A stretch of 60,809 nucleotides of DNA, filler included, from Sluysia triapertura (lineage: Eukaryota), in assembly GCA_046118255.1 (NCBI GenBank). It is 5 parts of 5 records of this genome, joined end to end, with 100 filler letters (N's around TTAATTAATTAA, not from the genome) between each part and the next. Parts side by side here need not be neighbours in the genome. Positions count along the whole stretch, not along the records: positions 23,935 to 35,561 come from JBJNIA010182701.1; 4 more parts are not named here. The stretch is one strand, 5' to 3'. The position numbers and the translations under genes are program-made. The notes beneath the pieces are model-generated. The model was not told where the DNA came from and ran no database searches. It was given only the letters and a program-made list of their open reading frames with translations. Positions 23,935-35,561 of the stretch are shown here, in pieces; position 1 is the first letter of the stretch, and every line of letters begins with the position of its first letter.

Positions 23935-24792
23935 ATATATAATTTATAATTAATATATAAAATTTAAAAGTAATATATCTAATATTTTACAAAATAAATT
24001 ATGCAACTATTTTACTAGAGTTAGTTAAAATTATATTTGATTTTATAGATAGTTAAAACTATATTTGTTTAAATTAGTACTAATTTAAATTTGTTTAATA
24101 ACCTAGACCTTTAAGGTCAAAGTTATTGAAAATACTATATAGCTACAAACTTTATACAATAATTTTAACACAAAAATTTGTATAAATCACCGTACGTTGT
24201 CTTTACAATAAAAATTTGATTGTATTTTCTAAAGCCATTATTTAAATCATATATCAAACCTTTTGTATCTGACACGAATACTTCTAAATCGCTAATTTTA
24301 TTTGATAAGATTTTTTTGCATGTATATAATAAATTGTTGAGGAAAGTATTACTTAAAATTAAAATTTATTACCTTTAGTGTTATTATTTAATAAAGATAG
24401 CCAATAATAAAGATAAATAATTGCTAAATTATAATTCGAAAAGATTGTTGAATCAAAATAATTTTAATAAAATATTTTATCTATAATTATAATTTTTATT
24501 ATCTGTTACGATTTATTTTCGAGTATTTATTAATAAATTTATCCAATTATTTAATTAATTTTGAAGAAATCGGACTAAAACCATATGCATAATATAGAAC
24601 TATAAAAGAATAAATTAATAAATTTTCATCAGATTTGATTTAACAAAAAACCAAGATAAACTATTAAATTGAGAAATGTTCTGTTAACGTGAATTGATTA
24701 GATTCTCTCAAACTCCTCACTACAATTTTTACTTAGAATAGAATTGTACTGTTGGGGTATAGGCCTAAGGTGCCATTTGGTGTAAATGAATA

Positions 24793-26600
24793 TGTTGGGA
24801 TTCACAAGTATGTGTCAGGAAATGAGGGAAAAACCTATGGAGTTATAAAATGAAGAGATCACTGGTAAAAATTAATGGATTTCACATTGTGAACATTGTC
24901 GAAATTAGAATCATGAAAATAAAAACATCTATAGTAATTTTAAGAGCTCAAGAATATTTTGACATTCCAAAGACCTACATAACTTGCCGAGACTTAGTGG
25001 AGGCTTGAAGAGGACTTGAAAAACCGTTGAAGGTTTTAGAACATCTTTGATTTTGTTAATTTTGAAATCATCTAAGACTCTATTAACCTTTAAGTATTCT
25101 GGAAACCTTGATAAGCATCTAAGATCGTTGAGTAATATTATAAAGTGTATAAAACCTTTAAAATATTTGAGAAATAAAATCATTGTTCAAGATAATAAAG
25201 ATAAGTTTAACATAGTAATAATTAACATGAAGAAGTAGAAAAAGGAATCAGGTGAAAAATCTAGAGCCTCCTGAGTGCCTTAGGACCTTAATAAAACCTT
25301 TAAACGTAGAATAAGATTAAGTCTAAAAATAGAATTAATTAATTAAAAATCGTAATTAACTTAATTAAGAAAAAGTACGTTTTTGTGAATAATGTTTGAT
25401 TGCAGAATGCTATGTTACATTTGAAACTGTGTATGTATTTGTTTGAAAAGACCTTTCGATGAAGGCACGGTCGACCGAGTTCATGCAAGAAAAGTCACAT
25501 TTTAATTAAATTTTAATTATGGAATGTTGAATCTGTTATACTTAGAGTGATGCAAATGTGATGAATGGAATATGAGATGATTACTATGGAAGATGAGAAT
25601 CTGTAGGTGAGTTCGAAGTGTTTGTAAAATGGTTCGTTAGAAAAATGGGTGTGGAAAATAGAAAATTAATTAAATAATAGAAAGCGAAATTAAATTCATT
25701 ATTTTTATGTATGTTAACAGTATTGCTGATTGTTATTTTAATGTGAGAAATAATTCAAGTAAAAATAGATTGAGTAGAGTAAAAGGAAATGATGATTAAT
25801 AATAAATCTGATTTCTATGTTTGTACCTAATAGAGTTTGACAGACCGTACCATGTAGTTGTCAAAGTTGTTATTGTAGGTTTGATTCTCAAAGCGGTTTG
25901 GATTATTTGTGTGAGAGTGTTTGGTTGTGAGATTGGATTGATTGGATGATGAGAGAGTATAAAATAAAGATTTCTAAATTTTTACAACACAATAGTAGTA
26001 GTGATCCACTAGTAGTGATACGAAGATCCATGTATGCGGTAAATTTTTTGTATCGTTAATTTTATTTTATTTAAATTCAGGGATAAATTTTATTTGAATT
26101 TGATTTTTTTAAATAATTTTGTGGGAAACGGCCCGGTAATTTTCATAAATTTTTAATACTAATCGAATAATTTATTGCTAAATATTTTGTGAGATTTTTT
26201 CTAGGAAACACCTTTTTAAATTCTCTTTCTATTCAGTTATTTTAAGGAGATTTTACAGACAATTCCCTATGCAATTTTTGTTAGCGATAATATTTAATTA
26301 TTAGACATTTTTTAAGATATTTTTAGAAGAAAATCCCTACGTAATTTAATTTATCAAAATACAAAGTGTTTTATCTTTAAAAATTATTGTTAAGTTATTT
26401 CATTAATTTCTTTAAAGTTATTGTTACCAAAAAATTTTATTGTAATCGTGTTCACTTTTTGTTACATTGGCCTAAAATATTTAAATAACATAATTACCAT
26501 TAATTTTCTAGATATTATTAGTGTCTGTTGCGTCACTTCTGGTTGTTTTTATTGAAAAGAAATTGTAATATTTTTCGTTATTATTGTAATCGCTATTTTA
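24793..26600 (+). repeat. Long repeat family C, copy 2 (possibly LTR-type; CCAAT- and TATA-like motifs at about 25930-25965)
   Basis: Homologous to 12967-13684 and inverted relative to about 29050-30260; begins tgttgggat. The right boundary is approximate. Confidence 0.8.
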
Positions 26601-27892
26601 CGTTTGCTATTTCAGTTTCATATTGTGAAGACTCATATTAATAATAATAAATTCTATTTTGGTTTTTATTTAATAGTATATTATTGTTTTAGTTCTGATT
26701 TGATTGTCAAGAAATTTAAATTTGGTATAATAGTTATTAAATTTTATAATAGTTATAAAAGAAGATTACGGTAAAATTTTACTGGATATACTAATTATTG
26801 AAATTATTAAGGTTTAAACTGATAATTAAAAATATGCTAAAAAATTAAAATATTTAAAAACACCTATGTTAATTTAACATTATCATTTATATTAACTTTT
26901 AATTATTGATTGCAACGATTTTAATTAATTTTATTTCATTTTATACAATTATTTTTACGGATATCTTTTTGTAAATGCATAAATTAAAGTTTCATTTTAA
27001 TTTGTTTTTTGTTGATATTTAATATTTAAACCAATAGAAATAATAATAATATGCACTATTAATAACAATAACAATAACCTAATGTTACTGAAGATGGAAA
27101 TGAACCTGTCAATCCAACAGACGATAAATCAAGTTGTTCCAAACATTTGGAAAACCTGGTAATATAATTATTCAGCTGAAATGAATATAAAGATTGAGTA
27201 GTTATATTTGAAATGTGGATTTTTCTAGCACATATATAAGAAAGGAAAGACCAAGAGGATATGTGAAGTGATTGAATCTTGAATACACCAAGTCTTAATT
27301 CGGAAAAAATGATTTTCGACGATTTAGAATCGAAATTAAGATAATTTGGTGAATTGGACCAACTAAAATTAAAATAATAAAATTACATATATAATATTAT
27401 AATATAATACACGCTTAATATTGTAAATATTATTAAAGAATTTATTTACTGTTACATTTGATTTTTATTAACATTGTAAAAATATTTTAATAAGTTTAAT
27501 TTAATTGAAATTTTATTTATTAATGTTTTATTTTACTTTGTTTGCTGATGAATTCTTTATATCAGTTGAAAAACAATTTCTTTTATGGTTTATCCTGGAG
27601 GCCGAGTTCGTACTCGTCTCTTCTGTTAAAGATGGAAGTGCTACTTCTAACTTCTAACTACTGAATCTTATTTTTCAATTTTCCGAATCTAGAAAAAATT
27701 TTAATATATTTTTGATAACATTGATATTTGTCAAAGTTTTAAAGGTTTTAATTACAGTCAAATAGTAAACTTTGCATCAATAGATAAGAATAAAGTTATG
27801 CTTGGTAAATTTTGGGAAGTAATTATTGTTTTTATAATTTTAAATAAATAAAGATATAAATACATGCGAGATTTTTGGAAATTGTAAGTAAT

Positions 27893-27936
<44 letters not shown>

Positions 27937-29049
27937 GATAATAATAATAATGATGATGAAGATGATTAAGATGATGATGATGATAAATTTATATTTACAA
28001 TGACTGAAACGCGCTTAAAATATTATTTCTAAAATAACTCATCACGTATCTTATTATCACTGTGTTTTTTGCATAAATTCCTACATCTTAAAAACATTCA
28101 TTTTATTTATTTTTGATTATCTCCAAGAAATATTTAAAATATACATAACATAAACATTTATAAATGTTTGTCATGACTTTGAATTTAATTCTTACTTTTA
28201 TTGGTAACCAGCGTAATTCATGAGATAAGGTATTATAAGATCTCTTTTTTAATTTAAAAAGAGGTCTTGACGATTAATTGGTATTTATAATTTATAAGTG
28301 TTAATTGTATGTATATTTATTATTAATTAAATATTAATAAATTATGTGAATGAAAAATTATTTTCAAAATACTTTACAAAATATTTTCAGACTTATTTAT
28401 GTTAGATTATTCTTTAAGAAAATTATTTTTTGTAATTATAATTTAAAATTGATTTAACATGAAAACTATTCAACCCATAACATTATTTTGGAGATGGCGT
28501 TATATATTTTTGTTTTCACGCTTAAATTGATTATTTAAAATTTCTACAAAATAGAGATCAAAAAAAGAATAGTAGATAAATGCAAAATGGTGTGCGAAAT
28601 ATAAGATTTTGCTATAAAAATGGTGCAACGGTAGTGTAAAAAGTTTAAAATAAAATATAGATTTAATCACCCAAATATTAAGTGCTACAAAGATATCCAT
28701 TGTTCGAATATTATCAAGTGAGTTTCATATTTATCAATCCAGTGTATTTCAAAGTTTGAAAATGCTAGGAATGACTAATAAGTGTCGCTTAGAAATAAAA
28801 TTTGACTTTACTGAAAATTAAAGAAACCAAATATAAATTTGCGTCATTTAAATTAACTTTATATTAACTTTATATTCAAAAATTCAGTAAATCAAAATAT
28901 TATGCATAATGCAAATAATTTAATCAAACAATTATGGTAAATGAATCTAACAAATCTTTTGACTATTCGACATTGCTAATAATAATTTATTAACAATACA
29001 ACTATGATATGTTAATATTATAAATCATTATTAAATAATGAACAATCAA

Positions 29050-30260
29050 CTTTCACATAATACTAATAACAAGAAAACCACTCGATGAACCAAGGGTAGC
29101 GCAACCAAAAATTTAGAAATAAATATCAATAAAAATTAAAAGCGTATTTCCCACAAATATTTACAATTCAAAATTACAAAGTAAAAATTAAAATAGTAAA
29201 TCGTCATTACCAATAAATTTTGATCAAATAATGCTTAATATTGTCATTATTATTGTGCTAAAATTTTTAACTATTTTCTTTAAAATTTTCTCAATAACCA
29301 ATCACTCTTCAGTTTTACAATCAAACATTCGCCCAAACAAATCAATAGAACATCCTTTGAGGATTACACCGAAAATATAGCTTTGACAATTACATGGTAC
29401 AGCCTGTCAGACTTTATTAGGTACGTAACATAAAAATTTGATTATTGATCAACAATTATTTTATTTTACTCTACTTTTACTTAAATTACTTCTCGTTAAA
29501 ATAACGATCATTAATATTGTCAACACATATTAAAAAATAATGAATTTAAATTTAATTTTTTGGATTCAATTGATTTTCAGTTTTTCTACCCAAATTTTCC
29601 AATGGAAAATGTTTAAGGTTCTTATTGAAAAGCAGTTCGTTCTTCACACATATCAAATTAATTACTTGATTTTCCTCTTTCATAGTAATTCATCTCTTCA
29701 ATTCATTGTTTTTCAACATTCTATAATTGAGAATTAATTAAATTTTGACTTTGCTCAACATTAAGGCTTTCATTACATGAATTCGACCAAACCATATCTT
29801 CATCGAAAGATATTTTTAAAAAATGGTATAAAGTTACAACTTTGACATAGCAGTCCGCAGTTAAACATTATTCATAAAAAGCACTTTTTCTTAATTAAGT
29901 TAATTTAACATTTTAATTAATTAATCTATTTTTAGACTTGATCTTATTTTATACTTAAAGGTTTTATTAAGGTTCTAAAGTTGTTTAATAAGGAATTCAG
30001 GGTATTCTAAATACTTTTACTTTCACCACTTTGAATCGGTTTTCTCAAGATTCACAAGTTCAAAGGTACTTTAAAGCTTCAAAATGTTTTCCAAAACTTT
30101 CTGAAGCTTCCTAAAGGATCTCAAAACTATGTAAGGTCTGTGGGATTCCAAAATAAATGCAAATATTTTCAACTTCATCATTTATTATGATTTATTATGC
30201 TTTATCCATCATTTTATTTCAATTTTCCAATTCCACTTCTTTCCTACACATTTCTTACTC
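29050..30260 (-). repeat. Long repeat family C, copy 3 (more diverged)
   Basis: ctttgacaattacatggtacagcctgtcagac corresponds to rc of 25836-25866; catgaattcgaccaaaccatatcttcatcgaaag resembles 12971-13004. Confidence 0.8.
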
Positions 30261-30969
30261 CACAGATGAGTAATAGCAGTTATTTGATTAAATACAATTT
30301 TTTAAAAGGTTTATTACTAGATACAAAAAGTGAAAATTAATGTTTAGATAAATAAGATATTGGTGACTCGGTCACTAAAAGGTAACAATTTATGCTTTGA
30401 TAGAATTTTGAGGGTATATTTAACTTTGAATTTATTCTTGTATGCATTGTGATGTATAATGTAATCACATAATATAATTAAATTTTCTCAACGTAATAGG
30501 TCAACATAAACAAAATTGTACTTCAACAAAATAATAACAAACCTCACACTTCGTCACAAACATATTATTAGAAAGTCCTGATGAGTTAATTATACATCCA
30601 GTTTCTTCAGACTATTACTTGTTTCGGTCAGTGACTCATATTTTTTACTAAACAGCTACATTGTTGTTGGCAAGACTGTTTAAGATTTATTTCGTTTAAT
30701 ATTTTGAATCAAAGTATTATACTTTTTATTTTTTCCAAAATAGTACATTATTTTTGAGTCATCTTAACGTATGATAAATCATTTTATTATATTTCGAATT
30801 TATTAATTCTTTAAAATGCGTATTTTGTATTTTAAAATGATTTTTTTAATTATAGTTTTTTTTAAGAACTATAAAAATAAATATTTATTTAAAACGTGTA
30901 TTAATATGTTTGAATTATTTAATACACTATTGTTGTGATTTTCCTTTTTTAGTTTTTAAAAAAATAATA

Positions 30970-33200
30970 TTAGAAAAACCTGATCACTTTCAATGATTTC
31001 AAAACTGGTTTTATTAAAGTTTCTAATTGATTAGCTGTAATAGTCACTCGATCAAGTTTTAAATCACTGAATCTAGGCTGATTTTTTAGCAATCCATTAC
31101 TTATATGCTCCAGATGTTTCAAATGAATAAGTTCCAAATTTATTATGTTTGTTATTGAATAAAATATTTGTCTAATACGAATAATTGGCATATTTTCTGG
31201 AAAAGTAAACTAAATCAATATTATCATTTCATATAGTTTGATTAAAATTATTTGAGAAGAGTTTATAAGTTATTCTCTTTATAACTAACTAGTTTCGTTA
31301 AATCAATACTAAATTATTTCAAAATTTAATAAAAAGCACCATTATAGATTAAATATTTATTTTTGGCTAAAAAATATTTCAATAAAAATAGTGATAATTT
31401 TTATATATATCTAAAATTTCAAAATTCGTTTATAAACTACTTCTAACTTTCTCAAAACATTTCTCGTAAATCTATTTATTGATTTAAGTGAATAAATATT
31501 AACTATTGACATAATTAAAATAATTTAAAAGAATCATAATTATAATAAATATTTGCTGCTTAACATTGCATTTTGTAAATAATTATTTATGAACATAAAG
31601 GCATTTGTTTGTTTGTTATTTGTTTCACTTACTGTGGCTTGAAATCATCATAATTAAAATCAAAAAACAAAAATAAAAACATATTAACCTGAAACACAAG
31701 TATTTGCTTTTTTTGATAAAAGTATCAAAATTAATTTACAATTAATTTATAAATTTAACATAAAATCTTGACTGTAAGCCTTATCATAAAGCAGCAATAT
31801 TCGTCTTATTTTATCATTTATAGGATATTTAACAGATATTTTCGATGCATTAGATTTATTAACTAGAATAATTTCGTAATGTCTTATATCATCATAGTTT
31901 CACCAAATTATTGTAATAAACTTTTTATCGAAGTTTTTCATCTTTATTGCTGATTTGTAAGTATCATTTTCGTCTAACCAATACTAAGACTTGCTAGGAT
32001 TGTTAAAGAAAACTTTTGTATTATCATAGAATACAATTTACTTGAAAAATAATCTGTGTAGAACACGTTCTAACGAAGTTTTTCTATTTTTAATTCTTTG
32101 ATTTTTTAGGAATCGGCTAAATTATGGTTTATTTATTTAAGCTTATTTATTAAATGAAAGCACAAGATCGAATACTTGGAAGTTCGTAATGACTTCACAT
32201 TATACGACTTAGGATTTCATTTTGAATTCGCATAAATGATAGGTTTTGTCAAGTTAGCAGAAATGATATGTAAGTTTATACAGTATATTGGAAGGTAATG
32301 ACAAATATTCACAAATTCATTCTTTAGTTTTATTTCAGTGTACGAATATTCCAGGTTAATAATTCTGATTTGAGTGCTGATAGTAGATCTTCAATACTAT
32401 TTATTTTTGTCTTCTATATTTTTAATATGCTCTCACCAAGTTCATGTCTTTGATCGATTATGCATCTAGTGCTGATTATACTTCATCCTCAGATTTAAGA
32501 CAAATTTTGTCATTGCCAATGTAGGATTAGTTGAAAATGAACAACTAATATACTTTAACATATAAATGGTCTTCTTATGCTTCATTTCTGCATTAGAACA
32601 CATAACTGATATTTCTCAAATTTAGTGTTACTGTACATTCTCATTATAGCCAACTTGTTGTGGTTTAATACTTGATTATTGTGATTTCGAACATTAATAT
32701 TCAAATTTAATAATATTTAAATATTTAATATTTATATTCTGGCTATTATTCAAGGATTAGTACTTATTAGGTCGAAAATTCAAGTTAACATATCCAACAT
32801 AATTTGTGTGACATATTTATCGATGCTACATCATCTAGATATAGCGAATTTTATGGAAACCCATAACCCCTGATTTTAAAATTAGTTCTAAGATTATGAA
32901 ACACATAAACAATGTTTAAAATTAGTCATTAATAATGGACAATCCTAATTAAATTCGTATTTTATATTTACAGCTTTTGTAAGTAAACTACTATATATGC
33001 ATCTAGTTTAGAAAATTTTTGCTAGTGTTCAGTTATTAACGACATCATAAGGAATCAAGCCAAATTCATTCATCTGTCGAAGTATTATTAACAGGCATTA
33101 ACCAATGATATCTGATATTAATTATCCAATAAATATGTTCGAGTATTGTTAACTTTGACAAAGGAAAGTTGAATGGAGCATGTTCATCACCAATAATTGA
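30970..33200 (-). pseudogene. Decayed leucine-rich-repeat-like gene
   Basis: Exon-like segment 30976-31196 (ttccag acceptor) encodes NIINLELIHLKHLEHISNGLLKNQPRFSDLKLDRVTI with LRR-like spacing. Upstream frames carry stops and fragments such as ELPSIRSCAF. Confidence 0.35.
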
Positions 33201-33419
33201 AAAGTTGAGCAAATAAATTTAAAATAAATTTAAATTTTAAAATATGCGAAACATTAAATCAATCAATAACCGTTTATAATTGTTATTTTTGTATTTTTAA
33301 AAGAATTTAATATTATTTGCTCTAGTCAAACATTGTATTATTTAATTAACTTATAATAAACTCAAAAAGAGCATACTTTTGCAAGAAATGTGTGTGTAGA
33401 ATAAAGCGACTTAAATAAT

Positions 33420-34110
33420 AATAAGTGAGTCCACCAACGTATTGGGCTTACGAACTTAATGGCCAACCGTTGGATTTTAAAATCAATTATCAAAAATCTA
33501 ATTTAATATGATTAAATAGTTTATTTAATATTTTAGGTCTTTTATTGGATTTTAAGTGATTTCAATAATTTAAAAATAAAATAAGCAAAAGATTTTAATG
33601 AGATTCGATTATACGAACCTTTTTAGTGTTAAGAGTTTAATAAGGTTCAATGAAAGTGAACCTGTTGATTATTTTAATGTGATTCTCAAAGGAACCAGTG
33701 TTTAATTTTAAATATTGTAATAAGTAATTAGGAAAATTTTATTAAATACAAAAATGTATGATACAAGATTCAATAATAATACAAAATTAAATATAATATT
33801 TATAATCGATTACAATAGACTATTTTATAAATAATCTGAAATGATAATTTTAATAAATATTTTAATATGCTATCGATAAATCATAGCAAAAATTTAAATG
33901 AATTTTACGTAATATTTTGGAAATCCAATATTATAAATTGCGAAAGAACTTAAAATAAAAACTAACGAATATAACAATTATTAAAACGATCCTTGAATCC
34001 TTCCAAGTGAAAGTCAAAGCTGAACTGCGAAAACGTTTAAAAATATTGCAAAACTTGTATGAAAAATTGTGTGAACTATCTTAAATGGTCAGTGCTTTTA
34101 TATTTATTTG
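33420..34110. repeat. Unclassified interspersed repeat family A, copy 2
   Basis: Colinear similarity to 190-1200. Confidence 0.55.
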
Positions 34111-34583
34111 AATGTCCTTGAAACAATAAAATCTTTAAATAATTAAAACAATAAATAATGATTTTAGTAATAATGATTTTAGTAAAATAATATTAATAAT
34201 TTTTAAAATAATATTAATAATTTTTTATCAATAATAATAATAAAATAATATCAACAATAACAATAAAATAATAAATAATTTTCAAAACAATAAAATAATA
34301 TCAACCTGAATGACATGACGATTCCAAATAATTGAATATTAAAATTATAAATAAATTCCAAATAATTTTAAAATTACAATTAATACGTTCCAACTTATAT
34401 AATTATATATTTAATTTAACTGATTATTAAATCTATATTAAATCTAGTTTACAATTAGAATTAGACCTTGATATTTTACGTTTACTACGCTTACATTAGA
34501 CCTTGATCTTTTACATTATTATTATTATTATTATTATTATCATTATTATTATTATTAAATAAATGTCGATTAAACTGGTCGCT

Positions 34584-34753
34584 ACCACCACCAGTTTTGA
34601 CACAAATGTTACATTTTTCATTAAAGTGCCAACACTGATGATGGTCAATCATAAGATCAATAATTTCAGTGTCAAAATACCACTTACATTATACGTCATC
34701 CAATCAGTACTTATCATTCGCTTTAATCATTATTAAAGACCTGATTGGATGAC
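34584..34753. other. Twin-hairpin element, copy 1
   Basis: IR1 34584-34603/34626-34645 (16/20); IR2 34695-34707/34741-34753 (13/13 perfect). Confidence 0.85.
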
Positions 34754-34818
34754 CAATAATAACGTCGTTGTTAAAAAATAGTAAAAATAGAAACAAGTTT
34801 TGCCAGAAAATAATTAAA

Positions 34819-35561
34819 ATGATTACTCTCAAAAATTTCTCTCAAAGATTAATCTCAAGTTAGCGTTTTTCGTTAAGCAAATTAAATATCGAGAGATTGC
34901 TCTCAAATCTTATTTTTATACGGGATAATATTTTCAAAAATTTACAATTAATAATGATGCAACAAGATTTAGATATCATACGAAGTGATGTACATCGAAT
35001 TGAAAATTCATCGATTAAACTAGAACGAAGAAAGTTAACAGATGAACAAGTTCATCAAAAAATTCATCAAACTTATAAAATCTTAACCAACCAATCGGAT
35101 AACATAAAACTAATTAAAGATGAAGTAGAAACCTCTAATAATAAAGACTTTGATAATAGTCTATGTATCGTCTGCAACCAATATTATGCATATCGAAGTT
35201 ATAAAGTTTCACTTACTCCTCATGATGAATTACAACAAGCACATGCCGAAACATTGACACGAATGAGCATAAATGATTTAATTATAGATTGGTTAATACA
35301 AGACGCTATTAGAAGTAACCTTTTTCGTTTTATTAGAAAGTTTATAATCCTTTTATTGAATTACTTTGATGATTCTGGCGAAAATTTGTATAAAGACAAT
35401 TGTTCTTCGGAAATACTTCGTAAATTCCATTAACTTAAACAGAAACTTCTGAACGTGTTAAAAGATCTTCTGTCAACTATGCATAGATCATCATTTCACA
35501 AAGAAAAAGTTAATTTAGTCGTAATGTTAGAAAAGAAATTATTTGTAGCCATGAAATCAAT
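34819..35561 (+). pseudogene. Intronless ORF of unknown family (coiled-coil, CxxC, helical) with two premature stops; runs off the contig
   Basis: ATG 34819 is in frame with track ORF 34897-35433. TAG at 34861 and TAA at 35431 interrupt an otherwise open frame to the contig end. Contains LCIVCNQ. Confidence 0.6.

What the first reader, a model, noticed from the sequence alone, without database searches (positions are those of the whole stretch)
34584..34753. Twin-hairpin element with compensatory substitutions, duplicated on another contig (56428-56601)
Seen: two consecutive stem-loops of about 52-62 nt occur in the same order at two unlinked loci. Loops and spacer have diverged but pairing is kept. 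Hairpin 2 changes ccaaTcag/ctgAttgg to ccaaCcag/ctgGttgg, a double compensatory change that also destroys the CCAAT sequence. Hairpin 1 changes gacaC...Gtg to gacaT...Atg. Five of the six remaining stem mismatches are C-A on the + strand, which would be G-U wobble pairs on a minus-strand RNA. Inference: selection acts on structure, probably in a minus-strand RNA or ssDNA (a pre-miRNA-like pair, a structured ncRNA, or the terminus/origin of an unclassified mobile element).
Basis: partly seen in the sequence, partly recalled or inferred. Interest (0 to 1): 0.8.

Follow-up and report, generated by a model that had tools for sequence, protein, structure and literature searches.

The report
Twin hairpins upstream of orphan gene
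Two unusually strong neighbouring stem-loops really exist here, but one is built from two inverted copies of a classic CCAAT promoter box just upstream of the only clear gene, so a promoter or repeat-borne DNA palindrome is at least as likely as a new structured RNA, and the claimed second copy could not be checked.

Summary
Both hairpins are real and far from chance. Hairpin 1 is 34584-34645 and hairpin 2 is 34686-34765. In a 70-nt sliding fold they are the two most stable windows of the whole 11.6-kb piece, and they lie 40 nt apart. Hairpin 1 is strand-asymmetric (z -6.1 on the minus strand, -2.6 on the plus strand) because of three G-U pairs. Hairpin 2 is a strand-neutral palindrome with a perfect 13-bp stem.

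All four G-U pairs fall on the minus strand, but that is not significant (p 0.125). The second copy and its compensatory changes lie outside my piece, so I could not check them. No related copy turned up in any collection I could search.

New here: each arm of hairpin 2 is TCATCCAATCAG, an 11/12 match to the NF-Y consensus. These are the only two CCAATCAG in the piece, and a third CCAAT follows. The boxes sit 200-255 bp upstream of the ATG of the only convincing ORF, an orphan of 159 aa. A (TAA)14 run begins 27 nt downstream of hairpin 1 on the minus strand.

There are no Rfam hits at gathering score, no MITE ends, no H/ACA layout and no canonical pri-miRNA geometry.

Best reading (about 0.4): a promoter-proximal palindromic module, probably duplicated or carried by a repeat. 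A structured minus-strand RNA remains open (about 0.25).

The parts
34584..34645 (-). Hairpin 1: 62-nt stem-loop, 23 bp on the minus strand (12 bp, a G.A mismatch, 7 bp, a 3/1 bulge, 4 bp, a 10-nt loop), 3 G-U pairs
   Evidence: -26.5 kcal/mol and z -6.07 on minus; -14.3 and z -2.55 on plus
34646..34685 (.). Spacer of 40 nt with no significant structure of its own. It holds GTGTCAAAA (34669-34677), a perfect 9-nt complement of TTTTGACAC (34595-34603) inside hairpin 1, which allows an alternative pairing.
   Evidence: I10; z -0.94; alternative fold competes once flanks are added
34686..34765 (.). Hairpin 2: strand-neutral palindrome with a lower stem, a perfect 13-bp stem and a 7-bp apical mini-hairpin (34721-34738)
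   Evidence: I1; z -5.96 plus, -5.87 minus
34696..34707 (+). Left arm, TCATCCAATCAG: 11/12 match to the NF-Y consensus YYRRCCAATCAG
   Evidence: consensus quoted from PMC3507159
34741..34752 (-). Right arm: the same 12-mer on the minus strand (CTGATTGGATGA on plus), an inverted CCAAT box
34753..34757 (+). Third CCAAT pentamer, abutting the right arm, with non-optimal flanks (CCAATAAT)
34515..34557 (-). (ATT)14 on plus, which is (TAA)/(AAT)14 on minus. It starts 27 nt 3' of hairpin 1 on the minus strand. Either a microsatellite or a possible retroposon tail.
   Evidence: period 3, 14.3 copies, 95% matches
34954..35433 (+). The only convincing ORF of the piece: 159 aa from the ATG, within an open frame of 189 codons (34864-35430). 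It has a coding-like GC1/2/3 of 0.41/0.25/0.20 and is an orphan. The hairpin pair lies 189-370 bp upstream of its ATG.
   Evidence: no relatives
34838..34896 (.). Weaker third inverted repeat, between the hairpin pair and the ATG
   Evidence: I3; z -2.2 plus, -3.1 minus

Best explanation
The twin hairpin is a real, non-random palindromic DNA module of about 180 bp in the 5' flank (-189 to -370) of an orphan protein-coding ORF. Hairpin 2 is best read at the DNA level. Its perfect stem is two inverted copies of a near-consensus NF-Y CCAAT box, followed by a third CCAAT. That is the layout of a CCAAT-box promoter that can recruit the NF-Y trimer in either orientation and open chromatin for the downstream ORF, and possibly for a divergent minus-strand transcript that would contain hairpin 1. 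If so, it is probably a duplicated or repeat-borne promoter/end region rather than a unique host gene. Pairing in such palindromes can be made and kept by DNA-level events that copy one arm onto the other, such as template switching during replication, so no selection on an RNA fold is needed. Shown here: the hairpins, their rarity, the NF-Y match, and the position relative to the ORF. Inferred: NF-Y binding, promoter function, repeat status, and the mechanism that keeps the arms paired.
For: The two most stable 70-nt windows of the piece sit side by side. If they were placed at random, the chance of lying within 110 nt of each other is about 0.02 (my arithmetic). Hairpin 2 folds equally well on both strands, as a DNA palindrome does. 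Its arms match 11 of 12 positions of the NF-Y consensus YYRRCCAATCAG (PMC3507159). Of the 30 CCAAT pentamers in the piece, only these two carry the preferred CAG flank; from base composition the chance of that flank is about 0.005. Three CCAAT fall within 58 bp, against about 2.6 per kb in the piece. The boxes lie 201-254 bp upstream of the ATG of the only ORF that beats chance: 189 open codons at a stop-codon rate of about 9%, with coding-like GC1>GC2>GC3. The element has 32% G+C against 19-23% in its flanks. The contig ends inside that ORF. An in-frame TAA is followed by 42 more open codons up to the edge, as expected of a decaying repeat copy. Template switching is documented to create perfect stems and multi-base 'compensatory' changes in a single event (PMC8794818).
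Against: NF-Y needs all five bases of CCAAT (PMC3507159), so that copy could not be an NF-Y site, and the kept pairing would point to structure or palindromy as the conserved property. The palindromy of hairpin 2 extends beyond what two binding sites need (lower stem and apical mini-stem). Hairpin 1 has no recognised binding motif and folds well on only one strand. I have no transcription start, no binding data and no knowledge of the organism. I found no second copy myself, so the repeat status rests on an unverified statement. I noticed the motif match after looking, so its p-value is optimistic.
Confidence: 0.4

Rival explanations
1. A structured minus-strand RNA. It would be either a host hairpin-RNA locus (a pair of precursors for small RNAs) or the 3' recognition module of a non-LTR retroposon or SINE, whose stem-loops are bound by the reverse transcriptase just upstream of a simple-repeat tail.
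For: Hairpin 1 is much better on the minus strand (z -6.07 against -2.55). All 4 wobble pairs are G-U on minus. A (TAA)14 run begins 27 nt 3' of hairpin 1 on the minus strand; stringent-type LINEs need a 3' stem-loop next to their tail for recognition (PMC4176376). The element is richer in G+C than its surroundings.
Against: The G-U bias is not significant (p 0.125). No Rfam family reaches its gathering score; the best is MIR827_2 at 26 bits against 67. Hairpin 1 has only about 24 rungs and no basal stem extension, too short for a canonical animal Drosha substrate. With flanks added, an alternative fold competes with hairpin 1. I found no target-site duplication (only 9-mers at chance level). 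The NF-Y match in hairpin 2 would be a coincidence. (AAT)n runs are common in this piece.
Confidence: 0.25
2. A DNA transposon remnant: one or two tiny foldback or MITE-like elements, or the subterminal hairpins of an ssDNA-type element. The arms would be kept alike because both must be recognised by the transposase, or because they are homogenised.
For: There are long inverted repeats with short loops. Both stems share a loose CAYC..AYCAG theme (alignment). The piece holds other old repeats.
Against: Neither hairpin nor the whole unit is flanked by a target-site duplication such as TA, TTA/TAA or 8 bp (reading). The unit as a whole has no terminal inverted repeats. No Helitron-type CTRR end follows either hairpin. 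The similarity between the two hairpins is not significant (p 0.13-0.34). There is no further copy in 11.6 kb.
Confidence: 0.15
3. Neutral by-product: palindromes made by replication template switches in non-functional AT-rich DNA, next to a gene by chance.
For: Template switching makes perfect stems in one step (PMC8794818). Several overlapping, mutually exclusive complementarities crowd around hairpin 1 (I10, I12), as expected from repeated local copying.
Against: The two strongest hairpins of the piece lie together. The NF-Y flank match, the position next to the only ORF and the raised G+C would all have to be coincidences. The reported second copy with conserved stems would also be unexplained.
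Confidence: 0.1
4. Hairpin 1 lies in a short minus-strand coding exon: ATG at 34652, 53 codons, Cys/His-rich and then poly-Asn, with a possible GTAAAA donor at 34514. That exon would be transcribed divergently from the plus-strand ORF, with hairpin 2 as the shared promoter.
For: There are 65 open codons on minus across hairpin 1. GC1/2/3 is 0.41/0.30/0.30, with GC1 highest as in the real ORF. The CCAAT boxes would lie 50-100 bp upstream of that ATG.
Against: Open frames of 45-65 codons are common by chance in this piece (one search lists about 60). There is no Pfam match and no word-search relative. No convincing downstream exon is visible. Coding constraint would not give conserved stems with diverged loops.
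Confidence: 0.05

Closest known systems
NF-Y (CBF/HAP) CCAAT-box promoters, including promoters with several or inverted CCAAT boxes
   Same: Each arm of hairpin 2 matches 11/12 of YYRRCCAATCAG. There are three CCAAT within 58 bp, in both orientations, about 200-250 bp upstream of an ATG.
   Different: The two boxes form a perfect 13-bp inverted repeat set inside a longer 80-nt palindrome. Binding and the transcription start are untested.
Pre-miRNA / hairpin-RNA clusters
   Same: Two hairpins of 62-80 nt lie 40 nt apart, with 23-28 pairs each and G-U pairs on one strand. Stability per nucleotide is in the range used to call precursors.
   Different: No family match at gathering score. Hairpin 1 has no basal stem. 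The upper part of hairpin 2 is a 31-nt, poorly paired region. There are no expression data and the organism is unknown.
3' stem-loop plus simple-repeat tail of stringent-type non-LTR retrotransposons and their SINEs (for example the zebrafish L2 elements of PMC4176376)
   Same: On the minus strand, stem-loops are followed after 27 nt by a pure (TAA)14 run. The unit is reportedly dispersed.
   Different: These stem-loops are much longer than the known recognition hairpins. There is no target-site duplication, no reverse-transcriptase remnant upstream and no defined 5' end.
MITEs / foldback elements
   Same: Short AT-rich units dominated by inverted repeats, lying near a gene.
   Different: No target-site duplications, no terminal repeats for the unit as a whole, and no other copy in the piece.
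Template-switch-generated hairpins (Monttinen and Loytynoja 2022, PMC8794818)
   Same: A perfect stem, and reported two-sided changes that keep the pairing.
   Different: This is a mutational mechanism, not a functional class. It cannot be tested without an outgroup or other copies.

Membership tests
NF-Y CCAAT-box promoter element | Intact CCAAT pentamer with the preferred flanks (YYRRCCAATCAG) | tested here: met
   TCATCCAATCAG occurs on both strands at 34696-34707 and 34741-34752, an 11/12 match. These are the only CCAATCAG in the piece (consensus from PMC3507159).
NF-Y CCAAT-box promoter element | Position about 60-100 bp upstream of a transcription start | not testable with these tools
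   Only the distance to the ATG is known (201-254 bp). No transcript data are available.
NF-Y CCAAT-box promoter element | Conservation of the pentamer in related copies | not testable with these tools
The second copy is outside my piece.
Animal pri-/pre-miRNA | Stem of about 33-35 bp including a basal stem of about 11 bp, with an apical loop of 10 nt or more | tested here: not met
   Hairpin 1 has about 24 rungs and no extension into the flanks. Hairpin 2 has 20 good pairs and then a poorly paired 31-nt top.
Animal pri-/pre-miRNA | Match to a described family | tested here: not met
   Rfam 15: the best matches are MIR827_2 at 26 bits against a gathering score of 67, MIR827 at 21.9 against 65, and mir-785 at 19.1 against 62.
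Animal pri-/pre-miRNA | Small RNA reads of about 22 nt from the arms, with 2-nt 3' overhangs | not testable with these tools
   No read data are available.
H/ACA snoRNA (hairpin-hinge-hairpin-tail) | ANANNA box in a short hinge, ACA 3 nt from the 3' end directly after the second hairpin, and internal pseudouridylation pockets | tested here: not met
   Reading: on both strands the hinge is 40 nt and has no ANANNA, no ACA lies directly after the 3' hairpin, and the stems are near-perfect without pockets. There is no Rfam snoRNA match.
MITE / foldback DNA transposon | Terminal inverted repeats flanked by a target-site duplication | tested here: not met
   The flanks of 34584-34645, of 34686-34765 and of the whole unit show no TA, TTA or 8-bp duplication. 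The unit has no outer inverted repeat.
MITE / foldback DNA transposon | Many dispersed copies | not testable with these tools
   The genome is not available. There is none in the piece and only chance-level palindromes in the metagenome, genome and viral scans.
Non-LTR retroposon 3' end | Stem-loop close to a 3' simple-repeat or A-rich tail on the transcribed strand | tested here: met
   On the minus strand, hairpin 1 is followed after 27 nt by (TAA)14.
Non-LTR retroposon 3' end | Target-site duplication flanking the insert | tested here: inconclusive
   Only 9-mers (TTACATTAT, CTTACATTA) are shared, about 0.8 are expected by chance, and they are placed inconsistently with a two-hairpin unit.

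The most novel reading that the evidence does not exclude
The two hairpins are a conserved, structure-selected minus-strand RNA module, present in several unlinked copies, in an AT-rich eukaryote. It would be either a new hairpin-RNA or small-RNA precursor family, or a new kind of double-stem-loop recognition signal for a retroelement. The CCAAT resemblance would then be incidental.
Probability: 0.2. Interest if true: 0.55.

Novelty: new member of a known kind. Interest (0 to 1): 0.33.

Why it matters
If the promoter reading holds, this is an ordinary, though unusually palindromic, CCAAT-box promoter of a lineage-specific gene. It would also be a caution: paired 'compensatory' changes in a DNA palindrome do not by themselves show RNA-level selection. 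If the RNA reading holds, it would add a multi-copy structured RNA, or a retroelement recognition signal, in a very AT-rich genome where such elements stand out as G+C-richer islands. Either way the question can be settled cheaply once the whole assembly and any RNA data are consulted.

Tried and rejected
- **Rfam.** I scanned the whole piece and then the locus alone. Only sub-threshold hairpin look-alikes appeared. The resemblance to plant MIR827 (15 of 21 bases of the mature region, by my reading of the alignment) scores 26 bits against a gathering score of 67. At E 0.75 for the whole piece it counts as chance.
- **tRNA/tmRNA scan.** Nothing found.
- **Pattern scans for the stem of hairpin 2.** Metagenome contigs gave three loci: L001 and L003 are one locus of a G+C-richer eukaryote with a 26-nt-arm palindrome, and L002 is unrelated. 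Prokaryotic genomes gave two loci. I estimate about 3.5 chance matches for a pattern this size, and the flanks share nothing with the window, so these are not relatives.
- **Pattern scan for hairpin 1 in viral contigs.** Nothing.
- **The ORF.** No Pfam match, no word-search relative, nothing in a full phmmer against 1.84 billion representatives, no atlas hit, and no exact-sequence record. The AlphaFold model has pLDDT 41 and is unusable, so I ran no fold search.
- **Other frames.** The minus-strand frame over hairpin 1 and a 107-codon frame elsewhere have no relatives and no Pfam matches.
- **Ciliate and other genetic codes.** Uninformative.
- **Hairpin 1 and 2 as tandem duplicates of one unit.** Alignment score not significant.
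- **Target-site duplications for a tailed retroposon.** Chance level.
- **Literature search for the arm sequences.** Only unrelated PCR primers.
- **Organism.** Could not be identified.

Full report
**Setting.** The usable piece is 23935-35561. It has 23% G+C. Under the standard code it holds only one open frame that beats chance: plus strand 34864-35430, ATG at 34954, 159 aa, with GC1/2/3 of 0.41/0.25/0.20. There are no tRNAs. It looks like nuclear DNA of a very AT-rich eukaryote, but I could not identify the organism. The ORF has no Pfam match, no word-search relative, no hit in a full phmmer against 1.84 billion representatives, no atlas hit and no exact record. Its AlphaFold model is unusable at pLDDT 41 (41).

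- Hairpin 1 (34584-34645) folds on the minus strand into 23 pairs (9 G-C, 11 A-U, 3 G-U). Its MFE is -26.5 kcal/mol with z -6.07 against dinucleotide shuffles. On the plus strand the three wobble positions become C-A mismatches, and it reaches only -14.3 with z -2.55.
- Hairpin 2 (34686-34765) has a perfect 13-bp stem (34695-34707 with 34741-34753), a co-centred lower stem and an apical 7-bp mini-hairpin. It is equally good on both strands, with z about -5.9.
- A 70-nt sliding fold over both strands of the piece (4624 windows, mean -6.05, sd 3.4) puts these two places first and second, at -27.6 and -24.2.
- They lie 40 nt apart. For two randomly placed sites in 11.6 kb, lying within 110 nt has a chance of about 0.02 (my arithmetic).
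- The 13-bp stem is the only perfect inverted repeat of 10 bp or more with at least 4 G/C in the piece. Only 1 of 100 block shuffles reaches 13 bp.
- The element has 32% G+C against 19% and 23% in its flanks.

**What could not be checked.** The second copy lies outside my piece. The duplication, the diverged loops and the two compensatory changes therefore remain unverified. The piece holds no other copy. Pattern scans of metagenome, prokaryote-genome and viral contigs gave only palindromes at chance level, with unrelated flanks.

**Strand bias.** All four wobble pairs are G-U on the minus strand: three in hairpin 1 and one in the lower stem of hairpin 2. Four of four has a two-sided p of 0.125, so it is suggestive and no more. 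When flanks are added, hairpin 1 competes with alternative pairings (TTTTGACAC with GTGTCAAAA, and AAACTGGT with ACCAGTTT), and the 122-nt MFE fold is no longer hairpin 1.

**New fact 1: the stem of hairpin 2 is a transcription-factor motif.**
- Each arm reads TCATCCAATCAG. The NF-Y consensus is YYRRCCAATCAG / CTGATTGGYYRR, and NF-Y needs all five bases of CCAAT (PMC3507159). That is an 11/12 match, present twice in inverted orientation.
- A third CCAAT lies at 34753.
- Among the 30 CCAAT pentamers in the piece, only these two carry the CAG flank. From base composition that flank has a chance of about 0.005.
- The boxes lie 201-254 bp upstream of the ATG of the only real ORF. The chance that the element falls within 400 bp upstream of that ATG is about 0.03.
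- I noticed the motif after looking, so these numbers are optimistic. Together they still make a DNA-level promoter reading of hairpin 2 serious.

**New fact 2: a possible tail.** On the minus strand a pure (TAA)14 run starts 27 nt 3' of hairpin 1. This is the layout of the 3' end of a tailed non-LTR retroposon, where stringent-type elements need a stem-loop next to the tail (PMC4176376). I found no target-site duplication, and (AAT)n runs are common here.

**New fact 3: signs of a repeat copy.** The contig ends inside the ORF's reading frame. An in-frame TAA is followed by 42 further open codons with coding-like GC1. This is what a decaying copy of a repeated gene, or of an element-borne gene, would look like, and assemblies tend to break in repeats. 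If that is right, it also argues for a multi-copy unit. This is inference and rests on an unverified statement.

**Known kinds tested.**
- H/ACA snoRNA: not met. The hinge is 40 nt without an ANANNA box, no ACA follows the 3' hairpin, and there are no pockets (reading).
- Canonical animal pri-miRNA geometry: not met.
- Rfam: nothing near gathering score. The best is the plant family MIR827_2, at 26 bits against 67.
- MITE or foldback: no target-site duplication and no outer terminal repeats.
- Helitron-type end: no CTRR after either hairpin.
- The two hairpins are not significantly similar to each other.
- A minus-strand open frame of 65 codons crosses hairpin 1. Frames of that length are common by chance here, and it has no relatives.

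**Verdict.**
- Best reading (0.4): a promoter-proximal palindromic module whose second hairpin is an inverted pair of NF-Y boxes. It is probably duplicated or carried by a repeat. Arm pairing would be kept by DNA-level copying such as template switching, which is known to create perfect stems and multi-base 'compensatory' changes in one event (PMC8794818).
- Main rival (0.25): a structure-selected minus-strand RNA, either a small-RNA precursor pair or a retroposon 3' module.
- Other rivals: DNA transposon remnant (0.15), neutral by-product (0.1) and coding exon (0.05).
- A genome-wide copy search with a covariation test, plus strand-specific RNA and small-RNA mapping, would decide.

Noticed in passing
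window 25280-25997 and 29248-29978: A large old inverted repeat: 751 aligned bases at 70% identity, with arms about 3.25 kb apart. Both arms are richer in G+C than their surroundings and each holds a CCAATCA. It may be two old copies of one repeat in opposite orientation, or the arms of a large element.
   Followed up: partly
window 35431-35561: The 159-aa ORF ends at a TAA, but the same frame stays open for 42 more codons up to the contig edge, with coding-like GC1 (0.40). It may be a nonsense mutation in a longer, decaying gene.
   Followed up: partly
window 34460-34515: ATTAGACCTTGAT followed by TTTTAC occurs twice, 37 nt apart, directly next to the (ATT)14 run.
   Followed up: no
window 34822-34906: The CTCTCAAA motif is repeated three to four times (period 13), and a weak inverted repeat (34838-34896) lies between the hairpin pair and the ATG. 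These may be core-promoter or 5' UTR elements.
   Followed up: no
window 27585-27664: The next most stable local fold in the piece (-20.5 kcal/mol, 43% G+C). It contains GAGTTCGTACTC, which resembles a tRNA T-arm. ARAGORN and Rfam report nothing there.
   Followed up: no
window 27062-27382 (minus) and 30973-31209 (minus): Open frames of 107 and 79 codons with leucine-rich-repeat-like spacing. Neither has a Pfam match; the 107-codon frame also has no word-search relative.
   Followed up: partly
L001 1416-1476 and L003 544-604 (the same locus in two metagenomes): A 26-nt-arm palindrome holding the same TCATCCAAYCAG 12-mer, with CCAAT in one arm and CCAAC in the other, and a further CCAAT about 20 nt away, in a G+C-richer eukaryote-like contig. 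I treated it as a chance match of the search pattern, but the layout is reminiscent of hairpin 2.
   Followed up: partly
window 34688-34762: Hairpin 2 resembles the plant MIR827 precursor: by my reading of the alignment, 15 of 21 bases of the mature region match. At 26 bits it is far below the gathering score of 67.
   Followed up: yes
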